Source: Mytilus trossulus | Lineage: Eukaryota | Length of the DNA stretch: 64,000 bases | Direction: 5' to 3' | Assembly: GCF_036588685.1 (NCBI RefSeq) | Contig: NC_086374.1 | Span: 9,982,001-10,046,000 of the forward strand | Part shown: positions 34,206 through 63,869 of the stretch, piece by piece | How the letters are laid out: the number at the start of each line of letters is the position of its first letter | How positions within the stretch are numbered: the stretch's first letter is position 1 | The notes under the pieces: model-generated | Seen by the model: only the letters and a program-made list of their open reading frames with translations | What the model was told of the DNA's origin: nothing | The model's database searches: none | Translations under genes and position numbers: made by a program

Positions 34206-34262
34206 ATGATGATGGATTTTAACGTTAGACTTTATCTTCTAGTACTCTTGTGTTTTATACAC
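34206..34262 (+). CDS. Exon 1 of Notch-ligand-like membrane protein gene (signal peptide)
   Basis: ATG..MMMDFNVRLYLLVLLCFIH|gtaagt, phase 0; joins VHG-ES of exon 2 to give a plausible signal peptidase site. Confidence 0.72.
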
Positions 34263-34795
34263 GTAAGTAAACAAACGTATGATGTCAAATAATACACTTT
34301 TCCTAATCGAAAAATTGTTGAATGTGATTTTCGTGAATAAAGAAAGATTGATAACCTTTATTGTATGGGCTATCTATATATATAAAAGGTTAGGCTAGAG
34401 ATACGTCCAGTATTTAAAATCTACGTAGCAGCAACGACATTGAACGCACCTGATAACAAATTTATGCACGAAAATGTGAACCGCGCGTAATAATATTATC
34501 TGCGTTATTCACGTTTTTTTGTGTGCGTTTTTGATTATTTAAATAAGTCTACTAGTTATTCCTTTTAATACAGCGACGTTCATGCAAGTAAAGTACGTAT
34601 GTGGTGCATAGATTATTACATGGGATTTTACATATATGACCCTTTATAGGCCGAAGGTTCAAGGGCTAATATCATGAGCAAGAGCCGATAAAGGGTCAAA
34701 ATAACATTCAATGATTTATTTGTATTACAGATCATCATATACTGCAGCAGAATAAATACCGACAAGAACAATTAAAATTTTGTCTCTCTTTTAAT

Positions 34796-37700
34796 TATAT
34801 TTCTTTTCGTTTTGAGATTTCTTTCTATTTCTGTTGCGTAATACTGAGTAATTCGGTTTTCGGACTTTATATACTGTTTTACGCGCCCTTTTCGTTTCAT
34901 CGAGAATTCAAACACCAAACTTGTTCGACAACTTTATGGACAACGTGAGTGACGAGGAAGACCAACGCGATGTTACATGTACTAACCGAGATTATGAAAC
35001 GCCTAATCAAACAGACCCAGATAATCATGTATTTTTTTTTTTTTAAGACGCCTTTTCTTTGTTTTCCCGTCAGCTGTATACTGTCAACCGTCTGAACCCT
35101 TATCACAAGAACTCCGTTGAAGGAAATGCTAGTTCTGATCTTATTCTTCACCATAGCGCAGCATATACAAATTTTCGTCTAGGAGTAGGAGCACGGCTGG
35201 TGGAAAAAGAGTTTGCACATCAAGCGAGTACTTTGGAGGAAAGAAAGGAGCAACCCAATCTTACTACTGGCACTGCAACGAGAGAGGTCATTAGGCCTAA
35301 CATGTACCAGGAAAGTAGGCAGATATCCCCAAGAGAAGCAGGTGCAGTGAAACAGTTAAGTACCAGTTTTATAATTTAAACGAGCAAGATTATGAATATG
35401 AAAATTCACTCATAAGATATAGAAACCCATTTTATTTTGGTAGCATTTTCGAACATTTTCATTTTTGAAAGATATTTAAAAAGCAACAATGTTGTTCTCA
35501 ATGTAAGTCCTAACGGCTATTTAATACCTTTTTATAAATAATAATTCTGCTTTTAAGCATTCAGTATTCGTGGAGCGTAACGTGTAATTAATAAGCCTTT
35601 AGAAACGAGGGCAGCTATTGAACGACGAGATCCGATTCCTTTTTTTGTTATAAATCATCGGACATATTGGATATTGTGGATATTTCAGAATACAACTAAT
35701 TATCTTTAAAATTTCAGCTTTCACCTTTGAATTATCTACAGCAGTACGTGTTTTCAAAAGTTTTACGTCCCGTTGTCAAGCATTTGCGTTTGCAGGGCCT
35801 AAAGAATTATATTATATATTGACGATGGCTGGGGAGTAGAGTATAATGCACAATCTTTTTAAATGTTATCTGATATCTTGTATCTAGATTTTATTTCCGC
35901 AGGTTTGTTTGGTTTTTTTTTGGTTTTTTGTTACCCAAGTGAAAGGCGTTTGGAAGCTTCTCAAAAATTAACTTGGCTTGGTTTTGAATGGGATCTTCCT
36001 TTACACTAATACTTTTTAGTATTTGTTTAAAATTTAGTATCTATACAGAAATAGAATGGATACCTAGTCATTATTATGAACTTGCCAATATTTACAGTAA
36101 TTGCTTTTTTACTTTTATGATTGGTTTGTATCCAATTTGTATTTTAACTATTTTGATAAAGTGTGAGGTCCATACACGTGTGACCTATTTGCAGACAAAA
36201 TTTAACTGTTAAATTGCAACATCTTTCAAATTAATTAGATCAATTTCACATATACTTACCTGTAAAGGTCAAGGCACTTTACTCGTACCGAAAAAGACAT
36301 CGTTACCTGTTTGGCCATTATTGTGGTCATTTAATGGTAATAGGTTTAAATAGACGTCTTCGTGAAATATTTAATCGAGTACGCCAAACCCAGCAGGTTG
36401 TTTCTAAAAGGCTCTGATATTAACAGATTTTCGTTGCTGGGAAATTGTTATTTAATATTTCATTCTGAGGTTAGATTTCAGAAGCTGAGGGCAATTATAT
36501 ATTTATTTTCCGGTGATGGGAGTTTATTTTAGACATTGTAACTACCCGTGATGGTCATTGCGACTTTTAACCTGTTATAGGTGTTTTTAATTGAACAGAT
36601 TATTTCCCGTGATAGGATTTTGTTTATTTCCCCGTGATAGGATTCTATTTATATCTTGTGATGGGATTTTGTTTACGTTCATGTGCTGGAATTTTGTTTA
36701 AACCCGTGATGGGACTCTATTTATCTCCTGTGATGGGATTTTGTTTATTTTCCCGTGATGGGACTCTATTTCTTTTCTGTGATGGGATTTTGTTTATGTT
36801 CCCTTAATGGGGATTCTATTTATCTCCTGCGACAGGATTTGTCAACTGATCTCAACTCCGTGACGGAGACCCTTGCAAGATTTTTTTGTCTGATAATTGG
36901 CACCATATAAGTCAATTTTTTTTTCACGTCTGAGACTTTACAAAAAAAAAGTTTTTTATAATTACGAAGAGATATATATCATCAAGTCAGAATTAAAGAA
37001 TATGTTGTTTGAAAACTGAATTTCATTGCTGAGAAATTATCATTTAACTTTATCGTTCTGAAGTTAGATTCAGAAGCTGAGGGCAATTGTATATTAATTT
37101 TCCCGTGATGGAATTTTATTTAGACATTGTAGTTACCCGTGATGGGAGTTTATTAAGACATTGTAATTACACGTGATGGGAGTTTATTTAAACATTGTAA
37201 TTTCCCGTGATGGGAGTTTATTTAGACATTGCTATTACCCGTAATGGGAGCTTTTATTTAGACATTGTAATTACCCGTGATGGAAAATTACTTAGACATT
37301 GTAATTACCCGTGATGGGAGATTATTTAGACATTATAATTTCCCGTGATGGGAGTTTATTTAGACATTGCTATAACCCATGATGGGAGTTTATTTAGACA
37401 TTGTAATTACCCTTGATGGGAGTGTATTTAAACATTGTAATTGCCCGTGATGGGAGTTTACTTAGACATTGTAATAACCCGTGATGGGAGATTATTTAGA
37501 CATTATAATATCCGTGATGGGAGATTATTTAGACATTATGATTATCCGTGATGGGAGATTATTAAGACATTGTAATTACCCGTAATGGGAGATTATTTGG
37601 ACATTGTAATTACCCGTGATGGGAGTTTATTTAGACATTGAAATTTCCCGTGATGGGAGTTTATTTAGACATTATAATTTCCCGTGATGGGAGTTTATTT

Positions 37701-39433
37701 AGACATTGCTATTACCCGCGATGGGAGTTTATTCAGACATTGCTATTACCCGTGATGGGAGTTTATTTAGACATTGTAATTACCCGTGATGGGAGTTTAT
37801 CTAGACATTGTAATTGTCCGTGATGGGAGTTTACTTAGACATTGTAATTACCCGTGATGGGAGATTATTTAGACATTATAATTTCCCGTGATGGGAGTTT
37901 ATTAAGACATTGTAATTACCCGTGATGGGAGATTATTTGGACATTGTAATTACCCGTGATTGGAGATTATTAAGTCAGACATTGAAATTTCCCGTGATGG
38001 GAGTTTATTTAGACATTATAATTACCCGTGTGGGGTATTGCGACTTTTAACCTGTTATAAGGTGTGTATAATCTAATAGATAATTCCCTTGATGGGATTT
38101 TGTTTACGTTCATGTGCCAAGATTTGGTTTATTTTCTCGTGATAGAACTATATTTTATCTGCTGTGATGGGATTTTATTTCCGTTCTCGTAATGAGATTT
38201 TGTTAATTTTTACGTGATGGGATTTCTATTTATCACCTGCGACAGGATTTGTCAACTGATCTCAACTCCGTGACGGAGACCCTTGCAAGAATTTATTATG
38301 TCTGATAATTGGCACAATATGAGTCATTTTTTTTTTGTTACGTCTGAAATTTGTAAGAATTTATTAATATACATGTTGTTTGATGCTGCAGGGTTTTCAC
38401 GATTTTAGCTTGCAAATATTAAAGTATCCAATTTATCTTTTTCACAAATCTCATCTAGATTTAGTAAAACAGATGTGTAAAGACACGGCAACACTTTTTG
38501 TATTGCTAGAACTAACTCGGACCTGTGTCCAGTGATATTTATATATCTTTGATTTCCAGTGAATATGTATTTAGAGCAATTAAGAAGTAAAACAGTATAT
38601 GCATGTACGTTATGCAAATCAGCAAACCTGTTTCATATACCAGAGCAAGACAGATATTTTAGATGCTTTGTGTCAAGATGGTTTCGATAAAAAATTAATT
38701 TGAGGAGTGGATGCGCGACTCCGACAGCTCATAATAGAAAAAGATAGAATTTTAAAAGCACACAGTAGATGAAAGTCAGATCTATTAAAAGACGGTTACA
38801 TAAAAGAAAATTTATATAACAGGTTATCTGTTGCTAATAATTTGAATTTGTAAATGACTATTTTTGTATCCTATTTATACCAGTCTACACCAGCATATTT
38901 CCTTTGTTTTGTCGAACTGTCTAGTGTGTATCTCCTGCCATACTAGTCTTTGTTGTTTCTTTATATAGCATAATAAATAATTTATGTTCGGACGAGCAAA
39001 GCGAGGTAGAAAATAACTATATTTCTTTTCGTTTTGAGATTTCTTTCTATTTCTGTTGCGCAATACTGAGTAATTCGGTTTTCGGACTTTATATACTGTT
39101 TTACGCGCCCTTTTCGTTTCATCGAGAATTCACACACCAAACTTGTTCGACAACTTTATTACATTAAGATTGAAATATTATGCTTTGTATAAATCCTAAT
39201 TCTTTGTATTTTCTTTTTGTAGATATTAGTAGAACAGTTGAGATGATTATATAGATAATACAATGGCGCATGATGTATGGTCTTTAATGTTAAATGCACG
39301 GCATATATGTATTTTGAAATGTTATATTAAAACTGTCTGGTGTGTATCTCCTGCCATACTAGTCTTTGTTGTTTCTTTATATAGCATAATAAATAATTGA
39401 TGTTCGGACGAGCAAAGCGAGGTAGAACATAAC
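34796..39433 (+). mobile_element. Degenerate Ngaro-type (DIRS-order) tyrosine-recombinase retrotransposon
   Basis: Split direct repeats A1 34796-34937 / A2 39018-39159 and B1 38915-39017 / B2 39331-39433. RT remnant YVFSKVLRPVVKHLRLQG..YIDDGWG (~35745-35835); RNase H IEWIPSHYYELAN; methyltransferase-like GPYTCDLFA and TLLVPK..PVWP; YR remnants KTDV*R.GN..CIART.SDLCPV, LRSGCAT and RW.SD..KDGYIKE (~38370-38850). Confidence 0.88.
37100..38030. repeat. Tandem satellite, 34-bp unit, ~27 copies, no spacers
   Basis: Unit cccgtgatgggagtttatttagacattgtaatta repeated head-to-tail inside the Ngaro element. Confidence 0.95.
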
Positions 39434-41411
39434 ATTTAAATATTGATTTTCAAAGACATCAAATACTGATTTGTTTACTCTAATTGTTTTAATTTATATT
39501 ATAGCATAATATTTATCGTGAGATATATATCACAACAACTGTTATGTTCTTAGTTTGAAAAATGATATTCACCTTTCCTGTGATGGTTGACCCCGATAAC
39601 ATGTGCCTAGTTTTTTCTTTATAATTGTCATGAAAAATGTCTAGCATCTTATTATGCAGGAAGCAGTTGGCGCTGGAACCTGTTTAATAGATATAAGCAA
39701 ATAAACCTTAGCTGTACATTTAAGTGAAAAACAACTTTCAGTAAAAAAAAAAAAGAACGATATTAGAAACAGCAAAATATATTATTTAAAAATGCAAAAC
39801 AAATAATGGAAAAAATGAAAAAAAAGTGTTCTTGACTGTAGGGCTGCTGTTGAAGCCTATGATAAAAAGAACATAACATAAAAATTTTCATATCAAACAC
39901 CTTATCAGCCCATGGTCGGCTCTCTGGAGTTGCATGATTTTTTAACAGAAGTTAGTATATCGACTTAGATACTATTATAATTGTAGTATAAAGGCCAGAT
40001 TTTGGCAATTATACAAGAAAAATAATAATATGTTGGTTTTGATTATTTCGAAACAAAAGCAGTGCTAATGTATCAATTTGATGATAGAAAAATAAAAGCA
40101 ATCAATATTTCATTCTAAATCCATAGCTATAAACAAAAAAGACAACAGTAGTAAACCGCTGTTCAAAATTCATAAATCGATAGAGAAAAAAAATAATTCC
40201 GGGTTACAAACAAAACTAAGGGAAACGTATCAATAATAAGAAAACTACGACACGGCAGAGACATAACACCGAAATGTAAAACACAGAGAAACGTACTATA
40301 GGGCAGGGTTGAGATTTCATAAACATGTTTAACCCCGCCGCATTTTTGCGCCTGTCCCAAGCCAGGAGCCTCTGGCCTTTATTAGTCTTGTTTTTTTTTT
40401 TTTTTTAGTTTCTTGTGTACAATTTGGAAATTAGTTTGGCGTTCATTATCACTGAACTAGTATATATTTGTTTAGGGGCCAGCTGAAGGACGCCTCAGGG
40501 TGCGGGAAATTCTCGCTACATTGAAGACCTGTTGGTGACCTTCTGCTGTTGTTTTTACCATTGTCGGGTTGTTGTCTCTTTGACACATTCCCCATTTCCA
40601 TACTCAATGTTACAATGTAACAATGGGCATTTTCCTGACTTAGTACAGGACATTGTATGAAAAAATGGTGGGTTGAACCTGGTTTTGTGGCATGCCTAAC
40701 CTCCCTCTTTAATGGCAGTGTTAATTATAGCATTATAATGACAACATTACACGACAGGGCTACAATAAATAAATTGGAGAAATTATAGGACAAAGAAACA
40801 AACGAATAATAGTCATCAAACAGTAACAGGTTAATAAATATTTTTTATCGCCAGACGCGCGCTTCTTCCACACAATACAATGCTCAGATGAAAAAAAGTT
40901 TGAAAGCCATAACAACTACAAAGTTGAAGATAGCCGGGGACCAATTCATATATCCCTTATCATAGAATCGAGACAGTGCAGGTAACTCTCTGCTTTCTTG
41001 TTTTTTAACGCATGCATCGTAGTAGGAAAGCATGATTGATATTGTTGAACCATTCAGTCTGTGTTGCAAAGAAGGAAAAAACACGATAGTGAGCAAAATC
41101 ATCATTCAGCTTCCTTTTGAAAGCTTTAACGTTTACATAATCTTTTACTTTTCATCACACGAATACACACGATTTGGGTTGACCGTACGTACTAAATTCC
41201 CTTTTATTCCGCAGCCTATATCGGACATAGTGTTTGTATACGACAAGACAAGACCAGAAATAAAACTGGTTCAAACCTTTAGACATAGTTTTATAGAGTG
41301 GCATTTTCTATCTCCTACTATAGAGAATCACACACTGGTTCAATTTCAATCTAGGTGTTTGATAGACATATCTGTATTTAACACCATTAATTAATATTTT
41401 CCTTTACTTAG

Positions 41412-41563
41412 GTTCATGGTGAAAGCAACACAATATTGAGCATACACTTAGCTGATCTCACAACAGACAATAAACTGGCTAATGGACAATGCTGTCAAGG
41501 TGGTACTCCAGTCAAACGTGAATGTTCAAAACCCTGTCATATTTTAATGACACTGTGTTATGG
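41412..41563 (+). CDS. Exon 2 of Notch-ligand-like gene (C2/MNNL N-terminal half)
   Basis: cctttacttag|VHGESNTILSIHLADLTTDNKLANGQCCQGGTPVKRECSKPCHILMTLCYG|gtaagc; phase 0 to 2; Delta-type CC..C..C....LC cysteine pattern. Confidence 0.85.
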
Positions 41564-42049
41564 GTAAGCATTTTTTTAGTTAATATTTTGATATATTTTT
41601 AGAAAATTCAAATATGTTTGGGAGTATACTAGTTTAAAATTGATTGAGCCCAAAAATTGATTTGGAGCGGGGTGCCCGGCCTTCTTTTGGCATTTCATTT
41701 GTTGTAAATCTAGACTTTTTACCGGATCCAACATAAATTTTGTTTTATTTCTGGCCATGCAGCTCATTTTTTTAAAATCCCCGACCAGTATCTAAAACAA
41801 ATGGTTCGACATTATGATGAGTATCCTAGAAAATCAGAGTTCAAATTATTACCGTTTTGATAAACTACAAAAGACAATAACATAAACAATGCATTCAAAC
41901 ATGATTGATGTATTATATGAACAGAAGCAGAAACTGAATTAGAATTATTTATTATAGTGTCACATACCAATATAAGATACAAGGAATACATCATAATTAC
42001 ATAATATGCATTTAAAAATTAAATATCACAGTTAAAATATTGGTACCCA

Positions 42050-42410
42050 GACAAATTACTGACTAATGAGACACTTTAAAAATATAACACATATTATAAA
42101 GCAACTAAAACTAATGTTCTAACATATTATTACACACACTGATAAAACATTTAATGTAAAGTGTTTGCTAACAATGTTTGAATTGCATCCTTTGACATTA
42201 AGAAAATAATAATGTCCTGTAAATCAAGAATCTCACAAATATCACCAGATGTCTTTATTGAATCAAATATATATCTAAAATCTGCATAAAAATCGCACCC
42301 TAACAAAACAAAATTTCATCCTCAATACAATTATTTGTACAATACATACAAGTAAGCTCAATTAAAGGAAAGTTTGGCTAGGTGTATCTACCCGTTTTAA
42401 CGGCCAGTCA
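42050..42410 (-). pseudogene. 3' end of a non-LTR retrotransposon (C-terminal Cys motif)
   Basis: Minus strand TGRYT..LIELTCMYCTNNCIEDE....GCDFY. Confidence 0.55.
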
Positions 42411-42683
42411 TATATATTGTGTTTGCGACAGTCATTGAAGAGACACTATTTTTATTGACTACTATATGATTGTGTTACAATATACTCCACACCTTAGTTT
42501 TAAACCTTTAAGTTCCGACTTGGTGCAGAAAGTAAACTTCTGTTGTGTTCTTTTATTCTTTCTGTGAAAATGCTTTCTCCGTAGACTCTCAAAGGCCCAA
42601 GTAAAAGTTTCTTAAACATTATGTTTTACCAAACTGAAAATAATAAAAATAGTCTCATTCGATTTCTGATTATCACGCTTTAA

Positions 42684-42945
42684 AAGAGGAAGGGACAGTC
42701 AAACTCCTAAATCAAAACCAAACTGACAACGCCATGGCTAAAAATGAAAAAGACAAAAAGACAAACAATAGTACACATGACACAACATAGAAAACTAAAG
42801 AATTAACAACACGAACCGTACCAAAAACTAGGGGTGTTCTCAGGTGCTCCGGAAGGGCAAACAGATCCTGCTCCACGTGCGGCACCCGTCGTGTTGCTTA
42901 TGTGATAACAAATCCGTTATATAGTCTTATTCGGTAGGTCACATG
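42684..42945 (-). repeat. Penelope-like 3'-terminal repeat copy
   Basis: Matches 57712-57990, including the ggtgctccggaaggg..ggcacc motif. Confidence 0.85.
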
Positions 42946-43391
42946 AAAAAGATAAAGCAGAACCTATTTTTCAAAGTTTTTAATATGTGCATATTTGTTT
43001 GGTATTAAAATGAATGTCATTAACTTTGATTAAGAAATTAAGTTGTAAACCGAATCGGCATTGTTAATGATGTCACATGAACAAACACATGCATAAATGA
43101 CTTATTGCCCTCAGAACTCGTAAGAAGGCAATGGATAAAAGTAGGTCAACTTCATTGAATGTAACACCATATAAAATAATGTACAGGTAAATCAAAATAT
43201 TTTTTTTTGCATTGTTTATAGTATGAGAACAGTTCATATGTAGATGTGAATTGTCTTTTTACAACTCAAAAGTGAAGTTGAAGGGCAACAAAAACCATTA
43301 ATTCCAAAAGATTTGACTGGTTGCGATGTTATTTCGTAAGAGTAAGAAAACAATTAATACTGTATTCACTAATATCAATTCATTATGTAAG

Positions 43392-43524
43392 GTCCTTTTC
43401 TTCGAAATGTGCATATGGATCTACAAATTTTACGTTGACGCCAAGTCAATCTAGAAAGGCTTCATTTGGTGAGAATCTTGGAAATACAACAAATCCGGTA
43501 ATATTACAATTGGTAGGATTGAAA
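43392..43524 (+). CDS. Exon 3 of Notch-ligand-like gene
   Basis: ctaat..tgtaag|SFSSKCAYGSTNFTLTPSQSRKASFGENLGNTTNPVILQLVGLK|gtaagt; phase 2 to 0; CxYG and NPV/I motifs as in Delta. Confidence 0.82.
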
Positions 43525-44418
43525 GTAAGTATTGTTTAATTTATGTCTTTTATGCCTCCTCGTACTTCTTATATTTTGGCAATTATAAAATGATAAGTAA
43601 AGGAATGACTGTCATGTTTTTTTTCTGTTTATGAAGACATAACATCAACAATGTGGTGCATTCTGAAAAACCCGCGTAGCTGGTTATTTAAAGTGTGCAC
43701 CACATTTTGCATCTTATTTCGAATAAGCAGAGAAAATATTACATTCATTTATGGTACCTGGTACATTTAATAACTATTTCTTATAATTAATAAAACTTGA
43801 GTTTATCATGAAAAAAACGTTGATGACGTCACGGTCACATGAAAATTATGTATATGAGCTGATAAACAAAACAACGACAGTCAATCAGACGCGTTTCATA
43901 TATAATTAAATTATTCGTTTTATTTCAATTATATCATGTCATAGAATTTAAATGAATTGACACTACAAAAAGTAAATACAACTTTGTTACAAAGCATATG
44001 TACACTTGTAATTGCTAATTGCATGCACTTTGTTTGATATCAATTTTTGTTTAAACTGTAATTTACGCCTAGAATACATAAGTTTCAGGCTTCGGTGTAC
44101 TAAAGATTACGAAAAATAATATTTAAAAGATTTTTTTGTTGACTGACGCTTGTTCTCAATGTTTCTAGTCAACAACAAATCAATGTAAATTTACCTGTTT
44201 CCATTGAACTTTCATGAAAAAATGTTATGCCGTGAAAAGAACGCATATACGTTAATTGTCAACAGGTCATTGCTTTAGGTACAGTTCAAAATGATCTTGA
44301 TTAATTAATCCTAATTTGAAATTTTAACAAAGAAATAGGGACCATTTAATGGCATTATCGAACCTACTATTCTATACTCCAGACGCAAAATAGAATTTAA
44401 AAAAAACACAGTTAAATT

Positions 44419-44686
44419 GGTACCCAACACTTTAAAAAAAAATGATTTGTATCGTTTGATTTTTTTAAAATTTTGACAAAGTATTTACTTGACCCTTTGA
44501 AGAAAATATTAAAATTTCAAAAAATTTGAACTAACCGTTTTATCAGAAAAATTACACTGGTTATATAGCAGTTTGACAAACACTTATTTTGATCATTGAG
44601 AAGTTTAATAATTCCCTTAAGAACACAACGTAATCAAAATGTTAAGCTGATTTTACAGAGTTATCTCCCTGTATTGTTAGGTACCA
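44419..44686. mobile_element. Small MITE
   Basis: Inverted ends ggtacccaacac / ttgttaggtacc. Confidence 0.55.
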
Positions 44687-49628: not shown

Positions 49629-49795
49629 TCTTACTACAGTGGACATGTTTATGCGTATGATATGTATCAAAATACAAAAAACTTGATATTCGACACACAA
49701 ATGTTCTTCAATTCCAGAACCGCTTTCCAACAAGCATATGAAGGATCAAAATGGAATCAACTGATAGTTCCGCATTCACCAACAGATCACTTCAG
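49629..49795 (+). CDS. Exon 4 of Notch-ligand-like gene
   Basis: ttttttctttcag|SYYSGHVYAYDMYQNTKNLIFDTQMFFNSRTAFQQAYEGSKWNQLIVPHSPTDHF|gtaaat; phase 0 to 2. Confidence 0.82.
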
Positions 49796-51140: not shown

Positions 51141-51169
51141 CTAGCTTTGTAGCGGTATCGGTGGATTTT

Positions 51170-53442: not shown

Positions 53443-53828
53443 AAGGAAGCTGGCTTGTCATGTTTTAGATTTTTTGTCACATTTTCGAAATCCTCTGGTT
53501 TTATCCATTTGAAAGCCTTGAAAAAAATTGCCCACTGACCCCCATTTTACTTTTTATAAATCTTTTACATGTATAATGATAAGCCATCTGTAAAAGTCTC
53601 ATAGAATTTTAATTACTTTTTAACAGTTTTTGAGAACTTGTCAATTATAAAGCTATGAAAAGTCAAGAGAGAATAACGCCAAAATGTCAATGGCTAATAT
53701 CTCGAAAACAAGAACGGTGACCTATATGTTTTTTTTTGCTCTTTGGATTCCTTAATCAATCAAAAATATCTATATATACTTGTGTTTTGAAAAGTTAATT
53801 ACTTTGAAACTGAGAAGCGAACTCCATA
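53443..53828. mobile_element. Probable MITE at a TTAA-like site
   Basis: Imperfect inverted ends ttaaggaagctggctt / aagcgaactccataa. Confidence 0.4.
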
Positions 53829-54874
53829 ACAAAGGCTGCACGTAATTGAAGTCGCAATTGAACCGTAAATATAAAAAAGAAGATGTGGTATGATTGCAAA
53901 CGAAACAACTGTCCACAAGAGACCAAGATAACACAGACATTAACAACTATAGGTCAACGTACGGCTTCCACAATGAGCAATGCCCATACTGCATAGACAG
54001 TTATAAAAGGCCCCGATATGACAATGTAAAAGAATTCAAACGAGAAACTAATGGCCTTATTTATATAAAAAAAAAATGAAGTCAGTTCAATTTTGATCTA
54101 CGCTAGCGATCAAAATGGACATTCTACATTTATAAAATATAAAATGGACAAGTTTAAAAGTACGTTTATAAATTGTGACATGGACAGAGAGTTGTCTCAT
54201 TGATACTCGCACCACATCTTCTTATGTCTATTTGTGTTCTCTCTAGGTAATTTAAAAATAAAAACACATTTACGTGTATCTGTTTAATTTTTATCGTTTA
54301 ACTGGTGAATTTCCTTAACGTTTCTAAAATGGCTTCCTTTCGAGCGTGAATTAAAAGTCCGCTTCGAAGTACACAAGTTGAAATTCAAAAAAATTCTAGA
54401 TGTCATGCTCTATGCTCATTTAAGCATGCGTAGGCTTTGTATTTGTAAACATATAACACTTCGCTAACGCTTTGTATAAAAAAAAATTATACGTGTGCGT
54501 GCAAAACAAATTTCCTGGTAGAAGGGTCTAAATACTAAACAACATTTTTCAAAAGACAAAAAAAAATATTTTAACAAAACGCATTTGACTAGCAGGTCAA
54601 ACAACGGACGAATTTGTTCTTTAACCATGATGACTGCCATTGCCAAATAAACGGATCACTAGATGTAACAATTTGGTCTTAATTATTGTTCTATTAAAAA
54701 ACAGAAACAATTAACTTGCGGAAAAAATGGTAAACCGCAAACAATAGTTGCAGAAATAAGTACACCATATCCTGATTTCGACAATTAATTTTATTGTTTT
54801 AGAGGATGCAGTGTTTGTCGATATTTAGAAAGACAATGCTACTTATTTTCTATCTATCAATTCTATTTTTTCAG

Positions 54875-54996
54875 TTTAAAATTGCATTATAAGTTATACT
54901 GCAGCATTAATGCATATAAAGACAGAAACCAAGGGTGTTTAAACTGCAAATCAGATATGAAAGTCCACGAATGTTCATTAAGAAGCTGCAAACCAG
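54875..54996 (+). CDS. Exon 5 of Notch-ligand-like gene (end of C2 plus incomplete DSL motif)
   Basis: ttctattttttcag|LKLHYKLYCSINAYKDRNQGCLNCKSDMKVHECSLRSCKP|gtaata; phase 2 to 1. Confidence 0.82.
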
Positions 54997-55882
54997 GTAA
55001 TATTTTTTAAAAGAAAGTAAGGAAAATAAAGTTATACTTGAAAATTATCTTTGAACAATTCTCTTCAGGGAGCTTTATTATCTTTTCATAAAAATCACTT
55101 TATCAATTTCATATGTCCGAGGCGCTTTTATGGATTAACCTATATCAAGAACGCTCGAAAGCGAATATCGATGTTTTAGAATTTAAACAATTTTAAAGTA
55201 ACGGCAAACGGTTATTGTCCCTACTTTTAATACGGTTCGTGTATGTCAATGGCTCACTTAAGTACTTATATTATGTTAAGATGTTGTCTTTTGTGCTGAT
55301 TTCATTACTCTTTGATATAAAATAAGAAGATGTGACAAGACTGCAAATGAAACAACTCTCTGAAAGATCGAGACCAATAACACAGAAATTAACAACTATA
55401 GTGTTTGGCAGTAATAGTAACGTTACTCGACGTAGTTTTCAATAATTTCAACAGACTTCTTCACAAAACGTCAAACATTTGAACTATTTTAATACAGCTG
55501 GCATTTTGATGTTAAACTATGTATTTATATAAAAAAAAGAAGACTGAAAATGACTCATTATATATTTGAGAAATAAACTATATTTCCTCATAATCTGAAC
55601 TTATTGAAAGTATTTATTTCAAATATTTGTCACTGCCCAAGCATGTCAATTGTTGCAAAATGCATATCCTTTTTGGTGGTCAAGACTTCCTCATTGCAAG
55701 TATCTAAGTATAGGCATATTTATCGCGTGGAATCAGCCGGTACCAAAGTTGTTAGTACTTTATTAGTATAAATGTTATCAACCCGTCTTCAACTGTTCTT
55801 TTCGAACTACAAATATAGCCAATGATTCATAGGTATTTCACTTACATTATGTCATATTTTTAATATTAGCATAAAAAAAAAA

Positions 55883-56490
55883 TTCCATCTTCATTTAAAC
55901 TGGTAAAAGTCAGTTTATAAGAACAAAAGGCTCAAAACATGATGTTTTCAATTACAGACCAATTGTAATTTTACTACCAATTTCTAAAATTCTTGAAAAA
56001 CATGTGAAATATCTTAATAAATACAACTCATTGTGTAAAATGCAGTAAGGCTTTCTTGCAAACCATTCTTGTTAAACTGCGTTGACACCTTTAATAGATA
56101 AGTGGCTTGAAGCCATTGATAATGGAGATCTTGTTGGTGCAATGTTTCTAGTTAACATTTTCTTACCGTAATCATAAACTGTATAATCCTAATCATAACA
56201 CCGATCTTTTTGCTGATGATAGCACCATATCAGTCATTGGACAAAACAAAAGTTGCTTCAGTCAAAATCTTAATACGGTTTTACAAGATATGTTTCGCTG
56301 GTGTGATGACCATTAAATGGCTGTAAATGTATCTAAAACGAAAGCTGTATGAATTGGATCAACCAAAAACTTTCCTTTACATCAAATGAAAACATTAATC
56401 CTGCTTTAAATGAACAACCAATTATAGAAAGTACATGTGAAAAGGTTCTAGGTATTGTTATTGATGCATCTCTATCTTGGACTTTCATAT
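55883..56490 (+). pseudogene. CR1/L2-like LINE RT fragment
   Basis: NYRPIVILLPISKILEKHV, GFLANHSC.TAL..LIDKWLEAIDNG.LVGAMFL, LFADDSTI. Confidence 0.82.
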
Positions 56491-56699
56491 CGATTATATG
56501 ATCACGACGAAAAGTTCAATTATTTACATATGTTCTGTACAGTTTGAAGATAGTTAATGTACTACTAGCAGCAGTTGCGAATATAATAGTTCTTGTCCAT
56601 TCGTTTTAGATGCGTTTTGTTATTTGATTTTGCCATGTGATTATGGACTTTCCAAATTGATTTTCCTCTGAGTTCAGTATTTTTGTTTTTTTCTTTAAC

Positions 56700-57705
56700 A
56701 ATTTACAAGAATTTTAAATAAAGTTTACACACATGAAATTAAACTGTTCAAGTTCTTCATTCGTAAGATCAAAATCGGTGTCACAGGCAAGAATACAATT
56801 AAGCAATTTATTGTCAGTTATAATTCCTAAGTAAACACTAAATGTAATCGGGTTTATGTCTAAAACACTCCTTCAAAGTTGATCTCGAGGATCAACTGGA
56901 TAGTCACATGATAATATTGAATGAGTACAAGGATCATTTATCGTTTACCATATTTATCGCATAATATTCTGTTGTTTTGTAAGTTCTCGCGTATCAGACA
57001 GCACGTTAATGTTAAAAAATGGGCCTGCCTGTGCATCAGTGGGTGACGTATTGTTACTCTCCATGCCGCATGCGGTACACAAAACTAGTGAACGCTTTAA
57101 AAACAACAAAATCAGGATCCACTGCCATACGATGATGCCACTTTAATACCTCAACCTTATAAATTGACGTCTTGACTACCGATTTCCAAGTTGCCGAACT
57201 TGGAAATTGTCCATCATTGAGAAACTGATCAAGATATTTCGATAAAACATATTTTTTGAGTATTTCAATAATTTCACAAGCGAAACCTAATCTGGTGTCA
57301 TATTGATTATATCTAGCATCAATGAGTCTACGGAGAAGAATACGGAATGAGACAGCTGAGTATCGAAGGCGACATGTTCTTCCAAAGAACAACAGTTTTC
57401 GATCACATATAAAACTTTCAATTGAAAGCCATCCTAACAATGATACGCACATGTGCTTCTTGTTCTTCTTGGTAAACGTTGTATAAATTTACAAATATAG
57501 TGGTGAGTTCTTTCAATCATCAGTGTTTCAGTGCAGGTAAGTTTTCCCCATAGTTCACAACCGTATAGTGCTTTCGGATAGCAGAGCTGACGTATAATCT
57601 TTGCGCATACAATTTGATTTACAATGGCTCGGTGTATTCCAAGGCGTATAACTGATGTCGTTGTCGAGCGCAAGATGCGACAAGCTCTAAGAGTTCTGTC
57701 CATTG
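56700..57705 (-). pseudogene. 3' part of a non-LTR retrotransposon ORF2
   Basis: PKALYGCELW..ICKFIQRLP..LLGWLSIESFICDRKLLFFGR; clade not determined. Confidence 0.7.
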
Positions 57706-57711
57706 TTTTTA

Positions 57712-59910
57712 AAAGAGGGACGAAAGATACCAAAGGGACAGTCAAACTCATAAATCTAAAACAAACTGACAACGTCAAGGCTAAAAATGAAAAAGACAAA
57801 CAGAAAAACAATAGTATAATACGACACAACATAGATAACTAAAGAATAAACAACACGAACCCCACCAAAAACTAGGGGTGATCTCAGGTGCTCCGGAAGG
57901 GTTAGCAGATCCTGCTCCACATGTGGCACCCGACGTGTTGCTTATGTGATTACAAATCCGGTAAATAGTCTAATTCGGTAGGTCACATTCATGAAAGGAA
58001 AGGGGATTGTAGTTACGACGTAAATAACATATCCGATATCATTTGTGAAACGGTTATTCCATAACGGTCAACCAACTCGTGATGACGTCCGTAAAATTTA
58101 CGAAGGGATGATATCAACTTCACCATTTGGAACTCTTGGTTTAATAGCTTCCTTGTGAGCAGTAACCCTCTATCAAGAAAATCATGATAGGAAATGCAAG
58201 CACGGGAATATCGTATCAATTGGGAGATATATACCCCGTATGCAGGTGCTGCTGGAATGTTCCTACTTAGAAATAGAAAGTTCACAATTGGAAAGCTGAA
58301 ATCATCTCTTTTGTCGTAAAGTTTTGTTTTCAACCGACCCTCATTGTCCATTTCTAGATGTAAGTCAAGATATGAAGCCGACTTAACTGTATCTGTAGTA
58401 TCCTTTATCTCCAATTCGATGGGAAAGATGCGTTCCACATAGTCACCAAATTTTGAATTGTTTAGTGAAAAACGTCATCTATATAGCGGAAAGTAGACTT
58501 AAAGAATATTGCTATCTTTCTTCCTAAGAAGTTCCTGCATGAAGTCAGCCTCATAAAAATAGAGAAACAAGTCGGCAAGAAGAGGGGCACAGTTTGTTCC
58601 CATTGGGATGCCGACAGTCTGTTGAAAAACATGTCCTCCGAACGTAACAAATATGTTGTCAATCAAGAAATCAAGCATCTTGCTAATATCGGTTTCAGAG
58701 AATTTTTTGTTTGAATCAGAGTGATTCTTTACAAAGGTAGGATTTATCCCTCCCTAAGACAAGATACTTGTATCTACGTTGGCCATTCTTTTTTATGAAG
58801 CAAAGTAATACCAACTCTTTCAATTCGTCTTTTAGTTTGGAATGTGGAATACTTGTGTAAAGAGTAGAAAAGTCAAATGTTTTAATACTGTTACAAGATG
58901 AAAGAGAGTTAGATTGTATGTACTCTAAAAGATCTTTGGAATTTTTAAGTATCCACATCTGATTCACGCCAACTCTAGAATAGGCAGTTTCACAATAACT
59001 TTGAAGCCCGTCTTTGATTGCTGATAAAATAGATGTTAATAATTTAGAAAGAGGTTTCGTGGAGCACTTGCAAGACCCAGCAATATACCGTTGTTTGTAA
59101 GGACACTTATGTAGTTTAGGTATCCAATACAGTGATGGAAGATCCAGTTCTTCATCTTTGGTTGACATACCAAAGGAACAAAGAACAGACCTATGATTAT
59201 CCAGGATTTCCTCTTTGGTAAGTGTCGTGAGGTTATATGTTGAGTTTACAAGTGAATTGTCTATACCTAATTCGTTTATCAAGAATTAATGAAATGACTT
59301 TTACAGACAAAAACGATGTTGTTTGGGGCTTTGTCTGCGGGGACAACAACATATTTATCATGGAGGAACATTAGGGTCTTTAAAGATTGACGTAGCATGG
59401 GCATTGTTGGACCCATTCAGTTTCTTAATTCTGATTTGTATTAACGACCTCACTGCCTTAATCCATTCGGATAGAGTGTCTACGTCTTCCTTCTCGCGCA
59501 TAGCCCATTGCCTGGCATAATCCTCGACTGAATCCATCAAAATTGTAAAGTTGTATTTCCAATTGATGGAAATAGGCTCAGTCCCCCTCACGATATTTCG
59601 GACCTTTCGATAACACATTTCGTAGAGAGGTGTTACTAACAATGTTAAGGTCACCAGTAATAACGTGGCCAGCAGGATTATATGTGAATTGGGAACTAGC
59701 ACAAGTGCAATCAGGAGGTTTAGACTTGAAGTCGTCAATATCGAGATCCTGCAAAACGCGTTTGTAATTGAAACTTTTAGGATCTTTTAGTTGTAATAGG
59801 TTTGGTATAGGTATAAGAAATTATTGGTACAGACTGGTCTTTGAAATAAGGAGGTATTTTCGATTGAACTAATTTATGATGAAGGATATTGCCTAGGTTG
59901 ACGCCATCAA
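57712..59910 (-). mobile_element. 5'-truncated Penelope-like retroelement with frameshifted RT
   Basis: CTCASSQFTYNPAGHVITGDL..KGPKYRE; LPSLYWIPKLHK; KTFDFSTLYTSIPH; GIPMGTNCAPLLADLF; FRYIDDV; YLDL..LYDKRDDF..PAYGVYISQLIRY; ~300-bp 3' region; no GIY-YIG downstream of the RT. Confidence 0.85.
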
Positions 59911-60688
59911 GACACAATACGCATAAAGGTGAAAAACACCCCCCCTTTCTGCGGATGATGGGCAAATACACCGAGCCCTAACCCTTCAAGGCTGTGAAAT
60001 ACAAGGTTTATTTCGAGAGTATCTGAGAATAGATGGTAAGATGACAGCTTGTGAAACAGGAGATAGGCTTGTTATAAGCAAGACTCTAGACAAACCAATC
60101 CCCAGAAATCTGCCTATTGGAAGATATTTTGGGAGAATTTTCCATGCTGGTCAACCTGAATTCCAAAATAACAACAATGGTGAAAGAGAAGAGAGAACAT
60201 GTCACAAATGTCTTAAACCTGGCCATTTGCTTTTCCAATGTCCCAATGACTGGGTTTGCAAAACATGTAAGGAAAGCGGCCACAAAATGTTAGATTGTCC
60301 ACAAAATTTTCAGACTGTTGATGAACATGATCATGATGAATCTAGACAGCAACCTGAGAATGACAATATTGCATCTGTTGACAACACAGATCAGGATAAA
60401 AATGTAGATCACACTGAAATAGAAGTTCCTACAATACCACCTGCTAAAAAACAATCTGGAAAAAAGAACAATAACAGCAAAGCATCTACTAGCAAGACAG
60501 TTGCACCAAAAAGAAATAAAAATGGAAATAGTGACAATGTAGACAAAGTACAACTCCCAATAGATAGATCTGTTAGAACACCACATAGGAGAACAGTAAA
60601 TGCAAGTGACAGATCACCTCCAACACCTACAGAAGCTTTACATGACAAAACTAGTGGAACCATTGGAACTAAAAAAAGTAAAGGATAA
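59911..60688 (+). CDS. L1/Tx1-like LINE ORF1 (RNA-binding region plus two CCHC knuckles), 5'-truncated
   Basis: DTIRIKVKN.PLSADDGQIHRAL..CETGDRLV..CHKCLKPGHLLFQC..CKTCKESGHKMLDC plus a low-complexity basic tail; one frameshift in the C7 run at 59939-45. Confidence 0.8.
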
Positions 60689-60828
60689 TTCAAATGTATA
60701 GAATCACAAAACAATGACAATGATTGTACAATAGTTTTATCATACAAATTAACTAAAAAAAAATATGACAAAAATGACAATTAATCTGTTTCAGTATTGT
60801 TTTTGTTTTTCTGAAATTTAATCTTAAT

Positions 60829-61722
60829 TTGATATCATTTAAAAAAATAATAAAAATATGTAAAAGTTTAAAGCTCTTTAAAAGAGTTAAAAGTTGCTAT
60901 GAAGAAGTATTTATCAAATGTGAAGTTGTACTAAAATGTGAAACATATAACCAAAATGTGAAAATGTCAAATGTAGTGTGTAAATGTTGTTTAACTATTA
61001 TGATACATGTAATCATACATCAGCTGTTCAATGTTTACATTATAAACATAGGAATTAGGTTTTTACCTATGCTATATATAGTAACACGATTCACACTATC
61101 AGTTAACGGTGAACAGAACGAGAAACTTTTCTTTCTGAACCTTACATCACTGATGCGATACCTACAAATCAATAAAACAAATACAAGTAATACGATAGAG
61201 AAAAATAACTACTTGCCTGTAGAGTACGGATATAGTCCGGCAGTATGCACATATATTTGTCCACAACATCTTACTTTTAAATCCGAAAAAAAATACACAA
61301 AGTATATATCAAATGCACATGTATACAATAAAGCACCGCACTATTTCCATTGTATTGAATTAAAAAACCATGCAAGTAGCGTAAATCAGAAGAAATTCAC
61401 AACGATTCAGAATATTTCGAAACATGCTATATGCTGTGTTTCTGGTTTTACACTTTATAACCGTAAAAACATGAACGGCATTAAATTGTCCACCTTTCAA
61501 TCGTGTCGAGTTCTTGTTGTCAATTTAATACATATTTACATGATAGTATTTTCCTTTCAAACATGGACATCAAATTCTAAATTATTCAACTACCATGCGT
61601 TAAGTCCTACACTATCAAACTATCCAAATTTATTTACAATGCGTTTTAAAATACACATTACTTTCACGAAGTTTAATAGCGGAACAATTGGTTTAAGGTC
61701 ACACCAGGTGAAAGGTAATTAG
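60829..61722 (+). CDS. Unknown 297-codon ORF downstream of LINE ORF1
   Basis: Long stop-free frame in very AT-rich DNA with two hydrophobic stretches; no recognisable motif. Confidence 0.45.
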   Translation: MISFKKIIKICKSLKLFKRVKSCYEEVFIKCEVVLKCETYNQNVKMSNVVCKCCLTIMIHVIIHQLFNVYIINIGIRFLPMLYIVTRFTLSVNGEQNEKLFFLNLTSLMRYLQINKTNTSNTIEKNNYLPVEYGYSPAVCTYICPQHLTFKSEKKYTKYISNAHVYNKAPHYFHCIELKNHASSVNQKKFTTIQNISKHAICCVSGFTLYNRKNMNGIKLSTFQSCRVLVVNLIHIYMIVFSFQTWTSNSKLFNYHALSPTLSNYPNLFTMRFKIHITFTKFNSGTIGLRSHQVKGN

Positions 61723-63589
61723 TATGTAGGTTGTATAGATATGTGTAACAACTATGCATTAACCAAAATAATGAATATGTATTTTAATTGTGTACCAATT
61801 GATGTAACTGTATTAAATATCTCTGAGTGTTATAAAATTGCAACTTTGTGTAGTGTGTTGAAATTTAAGTATAATCATAATTCAGTGTATATAAAGTGCG
61901 AATCCAGCTAGTTCATTTTTACTGTTATATGCGGATATGTCTATTGTAGAATGGAGGATCATGGGAAAACTGTCATACGCAACTATTATCAGCACCCGCA
62001 GTGCGCATGCGCTAAGTTTGATCGCAGTCGATATCGACAAATTTACTATAGATTGTTAAAGGAAATATTGAATTTTGGTTAGCTGACAGTAAACAAAAAT
62101 AAATAGCTTATTCATTGGCATCACATTAGAAAATATATTTTCTTAGCTTTCTAATGACATAATTTATAATTGAATCGGGATTGCAGAAGTTACGGCCATT
62201 TTCATTTTAAAAAAAGTGGTTCATTCCCTATTACTTCATACAATTCAAAACCAAAAACGTATGCAAAGGAGTTTTCATATATGAATACATCTTTCACTAT
62301 TCTTAGAAATAAATCCATTGGCATAAATATATGTTCTTTGCTTTATAATCTTTCCCATGGTATATATTTGGTATTTTAGAAAATTTAATGAATCGGGGCC
62401 TTTTTTTATCCAAAACTGGAGTTGTTGTCATTGTTTGAAGATTGCGAGAAAAATTCTAAGTCCATGGAAGTATTATATTGATATATATAATACTTCCATG
62501 GTTCTACCAAGTAAATCGCTCACAGGTCACAAAACAAAGTTAAATCTATTTGACTTGTACATAAAATATTTATACATTTAATAAAATGTTTTACATCATG
62601 AATTTAAAAATTCAGTAAAGTAAAAGAAGTGTAACTTTTATTTAAAATAATATTTTTGTCCAGCTGTCAGTTTTCTTTATTTTTGATAATATAAAATATT
62701 TCATTATTACATTAACTCAGACTTTTGGATGTTTTTCGTGAAGCGTATTCAAAAAATTTGAAATCCCATCTAAAATGGATTTGTTTTTTTTGCAATTTTC
62801 TTACAGATCCTTTAAAAAGTTTTTTTTTAATAATAAGGCGGCCGTAACTAAACAATTTTGAAACTTGAACATGTTCATCTGATTAACATAGAAGTAATAG
62901 ATACATATTTTATAAATATTATTCTCATGTTTTAAAAAGACCAATTAGTTTTGATGAAACAGGAAAAGTGTCATTATCTTAAATTGTCCAGATGCAGTAA
63001 CACTTTCAGAAGATCTTTTGTAGTAGATGGATTTGGAATGAAATCTTATACGATACATTTTCTTTCATCAATTTGATACCTTTTCACTGCTTTTGATTGG
63101 CAATATGAATCGCTGTACTATCTTACATGTACATGTGATATATACTAGTCTATTGCTTGTTTGATGCACATTCTCCTTTTATCCACTTATCTTTTAGAAA
63201 AAATAAATTGCGTACGAACAAAATAAATATTATTTTTTATTTGTCTCCGTCCTTTCAGAAGTTTCTATCGTGAAATATATATATTTTTTTTATATTTGTA
63301 CATTCATGTAAAATTTGTATTAAAAAGGAAACTTATTTTGATTATTGTTCTGTTAATGTAAAGTTTACGGAGAGCTGTCTCATTGGCACTCATACCAAAT
63401 CTTCTTGCATTTATTTTGTACATGTATTTGCAGAATTTTTTATTTATCGAATGAATGAGATAATTTGAATCGTTAAAACATGAAAACAGATGCCTGCGAC
63501 CCCTGTTGTTTCAATTAGCATGTTCTAAAGATATCTGCGTGAAGTTCATAAATTTCATCAAGTATTTGATCACCTGTTGTGAATTTCAG

Positions 63590-63867
63590 ATAACACTGTA
63601 TCCGTGGTTAAAACTTTCCTTTACATATCAGTAATATTATTTTCCCCCCTTTTTTATATTATACTCGGAACATTATTGTATACACTTTTTCTGTGGGACT
63701 TTCTTTACGGTTTTAGGCGGCATGCAATAAAATTTTGGGAAAATTTGCTGATTAGTTTGAGAATATCAGTACATAAATTCATTAGTATCAGAAGTATGTG
63801 CTTCGATTGGCTTATATCTATAAAAAAAAAAAAAACAAGCAATCTAAGACTATATAATTTTTGTTAG
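63590..63867 (+). CDS. Probable exon 6 of Notch-ligand-like gene (transmembrane segment and cytoplasmic tail)
   Basis: gaatttcag| phase 1, D-NTVSVVKT-FLYISVILFSPLFYIILGTLLYTLFLWDFLYGF-RRH..; in frame with exon 5. A gtatgt donor at ~63794 could shorten this exon. Confidence 0.65.
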
Positions 63868-63869
63868 TG

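What the first reader, a model, noticed from the sequence alone, without database searches (positions are those of the whole stretch)
34206..63867. Hidden six-exon gene for a minimal Notch-ligand-like membrane protein with no EGF repeats
Seen: six small exons (34206-34262, 41412-41563, 43392-43524, 49629-49795, 54875-54996, 63590-63867) with GT-AG boundaries and matching phases (0,2,0,2,1). They join into a stop-free 302-aa protein: MMMDFNVRLYLLVLLCFIHVHG-ESNTILSIHLADLTTDNKLANGQCCQGGTPVKRECSKPCHILMTLCYGSFSSKCAYGSTNF..TNPVILQL..NLI..KWNQL..SLKLHYKLYCSINAY..GCLNC..HEC..CKP-DNTV..long hydrophobic segment-RRH. Known: Delta/Serrate ligands begin with a lipid-binding C2 (MNNL) domain (six Cys CC..C..C..C..CxYG, NPI, W, LxYxY), followed by DSL and EGF repeats. 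Inference: this is a very divergent, EGF-less C2+partial-DSL type I membrane protein. It could be a lineage-specific Notch decoy or modulator, or a C2 domain reused for cell, gamete or immune recognition. The ORF track misses it because ~97% of the locus is transposon-filled intron.
Basis: partly seen in the sequence, partly recalled or inferred. Interest (0 to 1): 0.88.

Follow-up and report, generated by a model that had tools for sequence, protein, structure and literature searches.

The report
Mussel Delta-like gene front, EGFs downstream
Five of the six proposed exons are real and encode the front end (lipid-binding C2 domain plus receptor-binding-type DSL module) of a divergent mussel relative of the Notch ligands Delta and Jagged. 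The proposed membrane-anchor exon is a chance reading frame inside a jumping-element copy, and the gene most likely runs on into a giant exon of about 26 EGF repeats 40 kb beyond the window, so it is not an EGF-less minimal ligand.

Summary
Exons 1-5 are confirmed. A tandem paralog about 132 kb downstream keeps all five exons at identical lengths with no stops (dN/dS 0.43). A Mytilus edulis RefSeq model (XP_071153812.1) uses the same four junctions.

Their identity as Notch-ligand C2 (MNNL) plus a DSL-like module is supported. Pfam MNNL scores 24.1 bits (cut-off 22.5) on that model. The ESM Atlas's structure of that model matches Delta-like proteins at TM 0.62-0.68.

Exon 6, the supposed membrane anchor, sits inside a dispersed repeat of at least 2.8 kb. 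Copies 92-96% identical lie on at least 8 other contigs, and the paralog lacks it.

Exon 5 ends in phase 1. It fits a strong acceptor 49 kb downstream, 40 kb past the window end. The junction closes the six-cysteine DSL motif (C-x-P-G-W-x4-C) and opens a 3.2-kb exon with about 26 EGF repeats. The paralog has the same layout, with about 39 EGFs and a mucin-like tail.

The RefSeq models stop short of the EGF exon.

An unchecked first-reader note records another C2-only Notch-ligand-like gene elsewhere in this genome.

The parts
34206..34262 (+). Exon 1: start codon and signal-peptide-like leader (19 codons, phase 0 donor gtaagt)
   Evidence: The paralog keeps a 19-codon counterpart with the same gtaagtaaa donor. 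The same exon is present in M. edulis P0010/P0002.
34796..39433 (.).
41412..41563 (+). Exon 2: first part of the MNNL/C2 domain (G-x-CC-x-G ... C ... C ... C)
   Evidence: Pfam MNNL 21.2 bits, E 2.2e-4, profile positions 10-46. 76% identical in the paralog.
43392..43524 (+). Exon 3: middle of MNNL/C2 (C-x-YGS ... NPV)
   Evidence: 82% identical in the paralog.
49629..49795 (+). Exon 4: C-terminal half of MNNL/C2, the best conserved exon
   Evidence: 87% identical in the paralog. A profile search finds M. edulis XP_071153810.1 at E 7.8e-35 and two short fragments from other assemblies.
54875..54996 (+). Exon 5: end of MNNL (L-x-L-H-Y-K-L-Y-C) and cysteines 1-5 of a DSL-like module; ends in phase 1 after C-K-P
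   Evidence: 55% identical in the paralog with all cysteines kept. The donor g|gtaat is the same in both copies.
54997..64000 (+). First 9 kb of the inferred ~49-kb intron 5. It continues to G000:C2:10086034, where the EGF exon starts (C2:10086035-10089190, outside the window).
   Evidence: There is no conserved coding exon between exon 5 and the EGF exon in either paralog. Of the nine long ORFs in the interval that I scanned against Pfam, four hit retroelement domains (RVT_1, Exo_endo_phos, zf-CCHC) and five hit nothing.
61974..64000 (.). Copy of a dispersed non-coding repeat of at least 2.8 kb (runs on to about 878 bases past the window end).
   Evidence: 28 translated matches genome-wide, many with stops. 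92-96% nucleotide identity over 2.1-2.8 kb to copies on other contigs. No long ORF. Absent from the paralog's intron.

Best explanation
The window holds the 5' part of a divergent, lineage-specific member of the Delta/Serrate/Jagged (DSL) ligand family in a mussel (Mytilus) genome.

Exon 1 gives a signal peptide. Exons 2-4 and the start of exon 5 give the N-terminal C2 (MNNL) domain. The rest of exon 5 gives five of the six cysteines of a degenerate DSL module. Exon 5 is then spliced across a retroelement-filled intron of about 49 kb to a single 3,156-base exon at G000:C2:10086035-10089190, 40 kb beyond the window end. That exon supplies the last DSL cysteine (the junction reads C-K-P-G-W-x4-C) and about 26 EGF repeats. 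It ends at a phase-1 donor, so at least one more exon should follow.

It is a chance open frame in a recently inserted interspersed repeat, and its 'hydrophobic segment' reflects AT-rich sequence.

A tandem paralog about 132 kb downstream has the same exon plan, with about 39 EGFs and a Ser/Thr-rich stalk.

Shown here: exons 1-5 and their conservation, the MNNL identity, the repeat nature of exon 6, and the existence, phase and motif fit of the EGF exon in both copies. Inferred: that exon 5 is really spliced to the EGF exon, that the product is a secreted or membrane-held extracellular protein, and any role in Notch signalling. The DSL module is too divergent for Pfam, so canonical Notch activation is doubtful. 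A lineage-specific adhesion or recognition role, or modulation of Notch, is as likely.
For: Splice sites, frames and phases of exons 1-5 are as stated.

The paralog keeps exons 1-5 at equal length with no stops; dN/dS is 0.43 and Fisher p is 3e-4. RefSeq M. edulis XP_071153812.1 joins the same exons at the same junctions.

MNNL identity: Pfam gives 24.1 bits (cut-off 22.5) over profile 8-141/157 on that protein, and 21.2 bits on the window's exon 2 alone. The cysteine pattern aligns with the canonical Delta exons of the same genome. The ESM Atlas gives feature score 0.92 to MNNL+DSL clusters, and all ten listed structure matches are Delta-like proteins at TM 0.62-0.68.

Exon 6 is a dispersed repeat.

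The EGF exon is an open frame of 1,072 codons (chance about 3e-37 at local composition). Pfam EGF E is 6.8e-102 with 20 stretches, and EGF_DL_JAG scores 27.7 bits. The acceptor has an 80% pyrimidine tract and is in phase 1, matching exon 5's phase-1 donor. The junction restores P-G-W-x4-C in both paralogs. The frame upstream of the acceptor has no ATG.

The same order and orientation hold in the paralog, with a 13.7-kb intron. There is no other conserved coding exon between exon 5 and the EGF exon in either copy. The long ORFs of the interval that hit any Pfam family are retroelement genes.

Introns that cut through cysteine-rich modules are the rule in this region of DSL-ligand genes (PMC2725086).
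Against: The two RefSeq M. edulis models of the paralog's ortholog do not reach an EGF exon. One (170 aa) ends by reading through the exon-4 donor. The other (221 aa) ends in an 11-residue tail after exon 5. That tail has no counterpart in the 224 kb examined here.

A profile search of 1.84 billion representative proteins with exon 4 found no long protein carrying this N-terminus. Word-based searches from the start of either EGF exon found only generic EGF proteins.

Pfam DSL does not score exon 5 or P0010 even at E up to 10. A 49-kb intron is long. No transmembrane exon was found for the window's gene.
Confidence: 0.72

Rival explanations
1. Two separate genes. Exons 1-5 plus a short terminal exon make a small secreted C2 + truncated-DSL protein of about 210-220 residues, as RefSeq models it in M. 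edulis. The EGF exon would belong to a different, neighbouring gene whose 5' exon has not been recognised.
For: RefSeq XP_071153812.1 (221 aa) and XP_071153810.1 (170 aa) stop without EGFs. No database protein links this N-terminus to EGFs. EGF-less DSL-family genes are reported in bivalves (PMC8166818). An unchecked note of this scan describes another C2-without-EGF gene in this genome (s1-830012).
Against: The 170-aa model ends by reading into intron 4, which gives Arg then stop, just as the window's own donor would. The 221-aa model's 11-residue tail is not found near either paralog here. The EGF exon starts inside a cysteine module with no ATG upstream in frame, and it needs exactly what exon 5 supplies. 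No conserved private 5' exon exists between exon 5 and the EGF exon in either copy.
Confidence: 0.15
2. One reading: exon 5 is spliced to 63590-63867, giving a 302-residue EGF-less type I membrane protein, at least as one isoform made by a recently exonised repeat.
For: An AG acceptor, phase 1 fit, an open frame and a hydrophobic stretch followed by basic residues are all present.
Against: The segment is the interior of a non-coding repeat of at least 2.8 kb, with copies 92-96% identical on many contigs. Several copies have stops in this frame. It is far younger than the gene duplication (dS 0.36) and is absent from the paralog. Its acceptor tract is weaker than the EGF exon's (60% vs 80% pyrimidines). 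Hydrophobic peptides are expected from 68% A+T sequence.
Confidence: 0.07
3. The window's copy is a decaying duplicate (unexpressed pseudogene) and only the downstream paralog is functional.
For: The window's copy is the more divergent one: 74.5% vs 93.3% identity to the M. edulis protein. It also has a much longer intron 5 and no database model of its own.
Against: All five exons and the 1,051-codon EGF exon are open, with intact splice sites and every cysteine kept. The chance of such an open frame is about 3e-37.
Confidence: 0.06

Closest known systems
Delta / Delta-like ligands (MNNL-DSL-EGFx5-9-TM; e.g. DLL1, DLL4, Drosophila Delta)
   Same: N-terminal C2 (MNNL) domain with the same cysteine pattern, followed by a six-cysteine module ending P-G-W-x4-C and then tandem EGF repeats. 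All ten listed ESM Atlas structure matches are Delta-like proteins. Pfam MNNL is over its cut-off on the M. edulis ortholog of the paralog.
   Different: About 25% identity to the canonical Delta MNNL exons of the same genome. DSL scores below Pfam detection and lacks the YYG and RPRDD-FGH motifs. About 26 (window gene) and about 39 (paralog) EGFs, against 5-9. The MNNL is split over four exons, whereas canonical copies here hold profile positions 1-100 in one exon. The transmembrane segment is not identified.
Jagged / Serrate (MNNL-DSL-EGFx14-16-VWC-TM)
   Same: A long EGF array after MNNL-DSL. There are weak hits to the EGF_DL_JAG and JAG1-like EGF2 models inside the EGF exon.
   Different: No VWC/cysteine-rich domain was seen. 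The EGF count is higher still. The atypical EGF1-2 (DOS) region directly after DSL was not recognised.
Bivalve-specific DSL-family expansions and mollusc Delta2 (Sci Rep 2021, PMC8166818)
   Same: A lineage-specific, tandemly duplicated, fast-evolving DSL-family gene in a bivalve. That paper reports DSL and EGF domain expansion in lophotrochozoans, bivalve genes with DSL but no EGF, and a Delta2 lacking the TM domain.
   Different: That survey did not include Mytilus (0 occurrences). The gene here keeps MNNL and most likely a very long EGF array, so it is not of the DSL-only type.
RefSeq Mytilus edulis XP_071153812.1 and XP_071153810.1 ('uncharacterized protein')
   Same: The same exons 1-5 (or 1-4) and the same junctions. 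93% identical to the paralog's exons and 74.5% to the window's.
   Different: These are short models that end by intron read-through or in an unconserved 11-residue tail. They are probably truncated models of the paralog's ortholog, not of the window's copy.

Membership tests
MNNL / Notch-ligand N-terminal C2 domain (Pfam PF07657) | Profile HMM score at or above Pfam's gathering cut-off (22.5 bits) | tested here: inconclusive
The window's exon 2 alone scores 21.2 bits, E 2.2e-4; exons 3-5 alone give nothing. The natural M. edulis protein made of the paralog's exons scores 24.1 bits over profile 8-141/157, and P0002 scores 23.6 bits.
MNNL / Notch-ligand N-terminal C2 domain (Pfam PF07657) | Conserved cysteine framework (G-x-CC-x-G, C, C, C, C-x-YG) and the N-P-[IV] and L-x-Y-x-Y-x3-C landmarks | tested here: met
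   Read directly from exons 2, 3 and 5 and aligned with the canonical Delta exons of the same genome. hhalign gives probability 68%, E 4.8e-5, over the CC...C...C...C-x-YG core.
MNNL / Notch-ligand N-terminal C2 domain (Pfam PF07657) | C2-like beta-sandwich fold as in DLL1/DLL4/JAG1 N-termini | tested here: inconclusive
   My two AlphaFold2 runs failed (pLDDT 40.9 and 31.6), so no fold search was made. The ESM Atlas's own model of P0010 (pTM 0.66) matches Delta-like proteins at TM 0.62-0.68 over 180-197 residues. This is model against model, and for the paralog's ortholog.
DSL domain (Pfam PF01414) | Profile HMM score at or above the cut-off (24.2 bits) | tested here: not met
No hit at E up to 10 for exon 5 or for P0010. 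Neither exon 5 nor the EGF exon is among the 53 DSL matches of the genome-wide scan.
DSL domain (Pfam PF01414) | Six cysteines directly after MNNL, ending C-x-P-G-W-x-G-x2-C | tested here: met
   Five cysteines are in exon 5. The sixth is supplied across the phase-1 junction (C-K-P | G-W-x4-C) in both paralogs. The spacing of C1-C5 differs from canonical DSL, and the YYG and FGH motifs are absent.
Delta/Serrate/Jagged ligand (whole architecture) | Tandem EGF repeats following DSL in the same polypeptide | tested here: inconclusive
   The EGF exon exists, is phase-matched and is co-duplicated. The splice itself is not shown by RNA, and database models do not include it.
Delta/Serrate/Jagged ligand (whole architecture) | Single-pass transmembrane segment and cytoplasmic tail after the EGFs | tested here: inconclusive
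   The EGF exon ends at a phase-1 donor, so more exons should follow. No convincing TM exon was found for the window's gene. A TM-like exon lies 1.9 kb after the paralog's EGF exon, but it is not phase-compatible with a direct join.
Delta/Serrate/Jagged ligand (whole architecture) | Binds and activates or inhibits Notch | not testable with these tools
The divergent DSL makes canonical binding doubtful (inference).

The most novel reading that the evidence does not exclude
These would be free C2 + truncated-DSL proteins acting as soluble or repeat-anchored decoys of the long form or of Notch.
Probability: 0.12. Interest if true: 0.55.

Novelty: new member of a known kind. Interest (0 to 1): 0.3.

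Why it matters
This result corrects an attractive but probably wrong reading. The 'minimal EGF-less Notch ligand' arises from the window cutting off a gene with a 49-kb intron, and from a repeat-borne open frame that happens to fit the phase.

What remains is still useful. It is a Mytilus-specific, tandemly duplicated branch of the Delta/Jagged family with a degenerate DSL and very long EGF arrays. One copy has a mucin-like stalk. Public annotation holds the family only as two truncated 'uncharacterized' fragments.

It adds a case to the known expansion of DSL/EGF genes in bivalves. It also shows that gene predictors fragment such genes at giant retroelement-filled introns. Whether such proteins still touch Notch is open.

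Tried and rejected
I did not try further.
I therefore could not inspect the one other DSL gene (C1:53.88 Mb) whose DSL exon also stops at profile position 37. I did not try to obtain those letters another way.
- AlphaFold2 on P0002 alone (pLDDT 40.9) and on P0010 with a 15-row alignment of exon pieces and canonical MNNL exons (pLDDT 31.6) were both too poor for a fold search.
- phmmer of P0010 against PDB sequences gave nothing relevant.
- Word-based homolog searches from the start of each EGF exon returned only generic EGF proteins. The best Mytilus hit (P0011) is about 30% identical and is not an ortholog.
- The search with P0010 returned only its own cluster.
- I looked for EGF-like exons in the 40 kb just after the window and found none. 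The EGF exon begins 35 bases beyond that stretch.
- I looked for a conserved 3' or TM exon shared by the two paralogs and found none. One 124-base colinear match is open in only one frame and does not look coding.
- Exons were handled one by one, or through natural database proteins.


Full report
WHAT IS IN THE SEQUENCE

Exon 1 (34206-34262) starts with ATG and ends at a gtaagt donor. Exons 2-5 each follow an AG and precede a GT. The frames are open and the phases run 0, 2, 0, 2, 1. Exon 6 (63590-63867) follows an AG, is open in the required phase and ends at TAG. Everything below rests on single exons given by reference, or on natural database proteins.

EXONS 1-5 ARE A REAL GENE

The window is G000:C2:9982001-10046000 of a 1.3-Gb genome. 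Other follow-ups of this scan call it a mussel. Its proteins here are 74-93% identical to Mytilus edulis models.

Each of exons 2-5 has exactly one other match in the genome. All four lie on the same contig and strand, 132-144 kb downstream. They match over their full length (50, 44, 55 and 40 residues) at 76, 82, 87 and 55% identity, with no stop or indel and every cysteine kept. Exon 1 also has a 19-codon counterpart with the same donor, 30 kb upstream of the paralog's exon 2.

Summed exon by exon, pS is 0.287 and pN is 0.140, giving dN/dS 0.43 and Fisher p = 3e-4. Ungapped flanks are at random identity.

A profile of exon 4 searched against 1.84 billion representative proteins found M. edulis XP_071153810.1 (E 7.8e-35) and two short fragments from other assemblies.

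WHAT EXONS 1-5 ENCODE

Exon 2 alone scores 21.2 bits against Pfam MNNL, whose cut-off is 22.5. P0010 scores 24.1 bits over profile positions 8-141 of 157, and P0002 scores 23.6 bits.

The cysteine framework and the N-P-V and L-x-Y-x-Y-x3-C landmarks line up with the four canonical Delta/Jagged MNNL exons of the same genome. hhalign gives 68% probability over the cysteine core.

My own AlphaFold2 models were useless, at pLDDT 41 and 32. The ESM Atlas, however, holds P0010 letter for letter with a model of pTM 0.66. All ten listed structure matches are Delta-like proteins (MNNL + DSL + EGF), at TM 0.62-0.68 over 180-197 residues spanning residues about 5-218. The feature search gives 0.92 to MNNL+DSL clusters.

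The DSL part itself is below Pfam detection.

EXON 6 IS NOT A GENE PART

Its translation matches 28 places on many contigs, most of them with stops. At the DNA level, the window from about 61974 to 878 bases past its end aligns at 92-96% identity over 2.1-2.8 kb to copies on at least eight other contigs. The 'exon' is therefore the interior of a dispersed repeat, and that repeat has no long ORF.

The paralog's intron has no such copy. A 4-8% divergence between copies is far younger than the duplication (dS 0.36). The hydrophobic 'anchor' is what 68% A+T sequence yields.

WHERE THE GENE GOES INSTEAD

Comparing 125 kb from the window onward with the paralog's region showed colinear matches at exons 2, 3, 4 and 5. 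The next colinear match is a large block at window-extended position 103949-105198.

That block is a single open frame of 1,072 codons. Its chance at local composition is about 3e-37. It is packed with EGF repeats: Pfam EGF E is 6.8e-102 with 20 stretches, EGF_DL_JAG scores 27.7 bits, and it holds 161 cysteines, or about 26 repeats.

Its acceptor (tttttttcttctag, 80% pyrimidines) lies at C2:10086033-34 and leaves the exon in phase 1, which is exactly what exon 5's donor (C-K-P, g|gtaat) requires. The junction reads C-K-P-G-W-T-N-H-L-C and is followed by D-L-N-E-C. This supplies the sixth DSL cysteine in the canonical P-G-W-x4-C setting.

The frame upstream of the acceptor has no ATG, so the exon cannot start a protein with a leader of its own. 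The paralog has the same acceptor, phase and motif (G-W-S-S-H-L-C), 13.7 kb after its exon 5. Its exon is 5,388 bases long, with about 39 EGFs and a Ser/Thr-rich tail. Both EGF exons end at phase-1 donors.

A translated comparison of the two exon 5-to-EGF intervals finds no other conserved coding segment, only repeat fragments. Of the nine long ORFs of the 49-kb interval that I scanned, four hit reverse transcriptase, endonuclease or gag zinc-knuckle domains and five hit nothing.

Module-splitting introns are normal in this part of DSL-ligand genes (PMC2725086).

WHAT SPEAKS AGAINST THIS

The two RefSeq models stop short. The 170-aa model ends with Arg-stop, which is what reading through the exon-4 donor gives. 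The 221-aa model ends in an 11-residue tail that I could not find anywhere in 224 kb around either paralog. I read both as truncated predictions, but they could reflect real short transcripts. No long database protein carries this N-terminus. No membrane anchor was found for the window's gene.

COMPARISON WITH WHAT IS KNOWN

The architecture is that of Delta/Jagged (MNNL-DSL-EGFn). It differs in four ways:
- about 25% identity in MNNL;
- a DSL lacking the YYG and FGH motifs;
- many more EGFs than Delta (5-9) or Jagged (16);
- a mucin-like stalk in the paralog.

Expansion and rapid divergence of DSL and EGF genes in bivalves is published. That work includes DSL-only genes and a TM-less Delta2, though it did not cover Mytilus (PMC8166818).

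VERDICT

My confidence by reading:
- a single long gene: 0.72;
- two genes, or genuine short products: about 0.15;
- a decaying copy: about 0.06.

This is a new, lineage-specific member of a known family, of modest interest. The main open points are the splice across the 49-kb intron, the 3' end, and whether the protein still engages Notch.

I did not try to get round any of them.

Noticed in passing
outside the window: G000:C2:10125329-10200122 (+), loci L013, L034, L029, L027, L050: An intact tandem paralog of the whole gene. It has exon 1, exons 2-5 and a 5,388-base EGF exon with about 39 EGFs and a roughly 330-residue Ser/Thr-rich (48%) mucin-like tail. It is the ortholog type of M. edulis XP_071153812.1 (93% identity).
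   Followed up: partly
outside the window: paralog EGF exon, window-extended 214431-216894 (C2:10196431-10198894): Inside the paralog's EGF exon, a unit of about 333 bases (three EGFs) is repeated head to tail about seven times at 71-79% identity to the window gene's single unit. This is recent intragenic amplification of an EGF triplet.
   Followed up: no
outside the window: window-extended ~118.9-129.3 kb (L036-L037): A tandem array with a period of about 1,748 bases (at least six copies) downstream of the EGF exon. It was seen as identical ORFs and repeated BLAST hits at 1,748-base steps.
   Followed up: no
G000:C1:53881962-53882075 (-) and L007 (C1:53888566-53888697, -): Another DSL-family gene whose MNNL exon stops at profile position 48 and whose DSL exon stops at profile position 37. 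These look like the same two intron positions as the gene studied here, so it is possibly the closest canonical relative.
   Followed up: no
L005 and L006 (G000:C1:3691496-3691639 and 3655829-3655972, +): Two tandem MNNL exons (profile 1-49, 32-34 bits) with complete single-exon DSL domains about 10-12 kb downstream (C1:3703679 and 3666137). This is a further tandem pair of Delta-like genes.
   Followed up: no
window 57000-61720 and L008:3890-8845: Retroelement remains in intron 5: a gag-like zinc-knuckle ORF (window 59933-60685, +), a 759-residue reverse-transcriptase ORF (L008:3890-6166, -) and LINE-type endonuclease and RT fragments (L008:7164-8845, +).
   Followed up: partly
window 34190-34205: A TATATAAA motif sits only a few bases before the exon-1 ATG. 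That is too close to serve as this ATG's promoter, so an untranslated upstream exon or another start site may exist.
   Followed up: no
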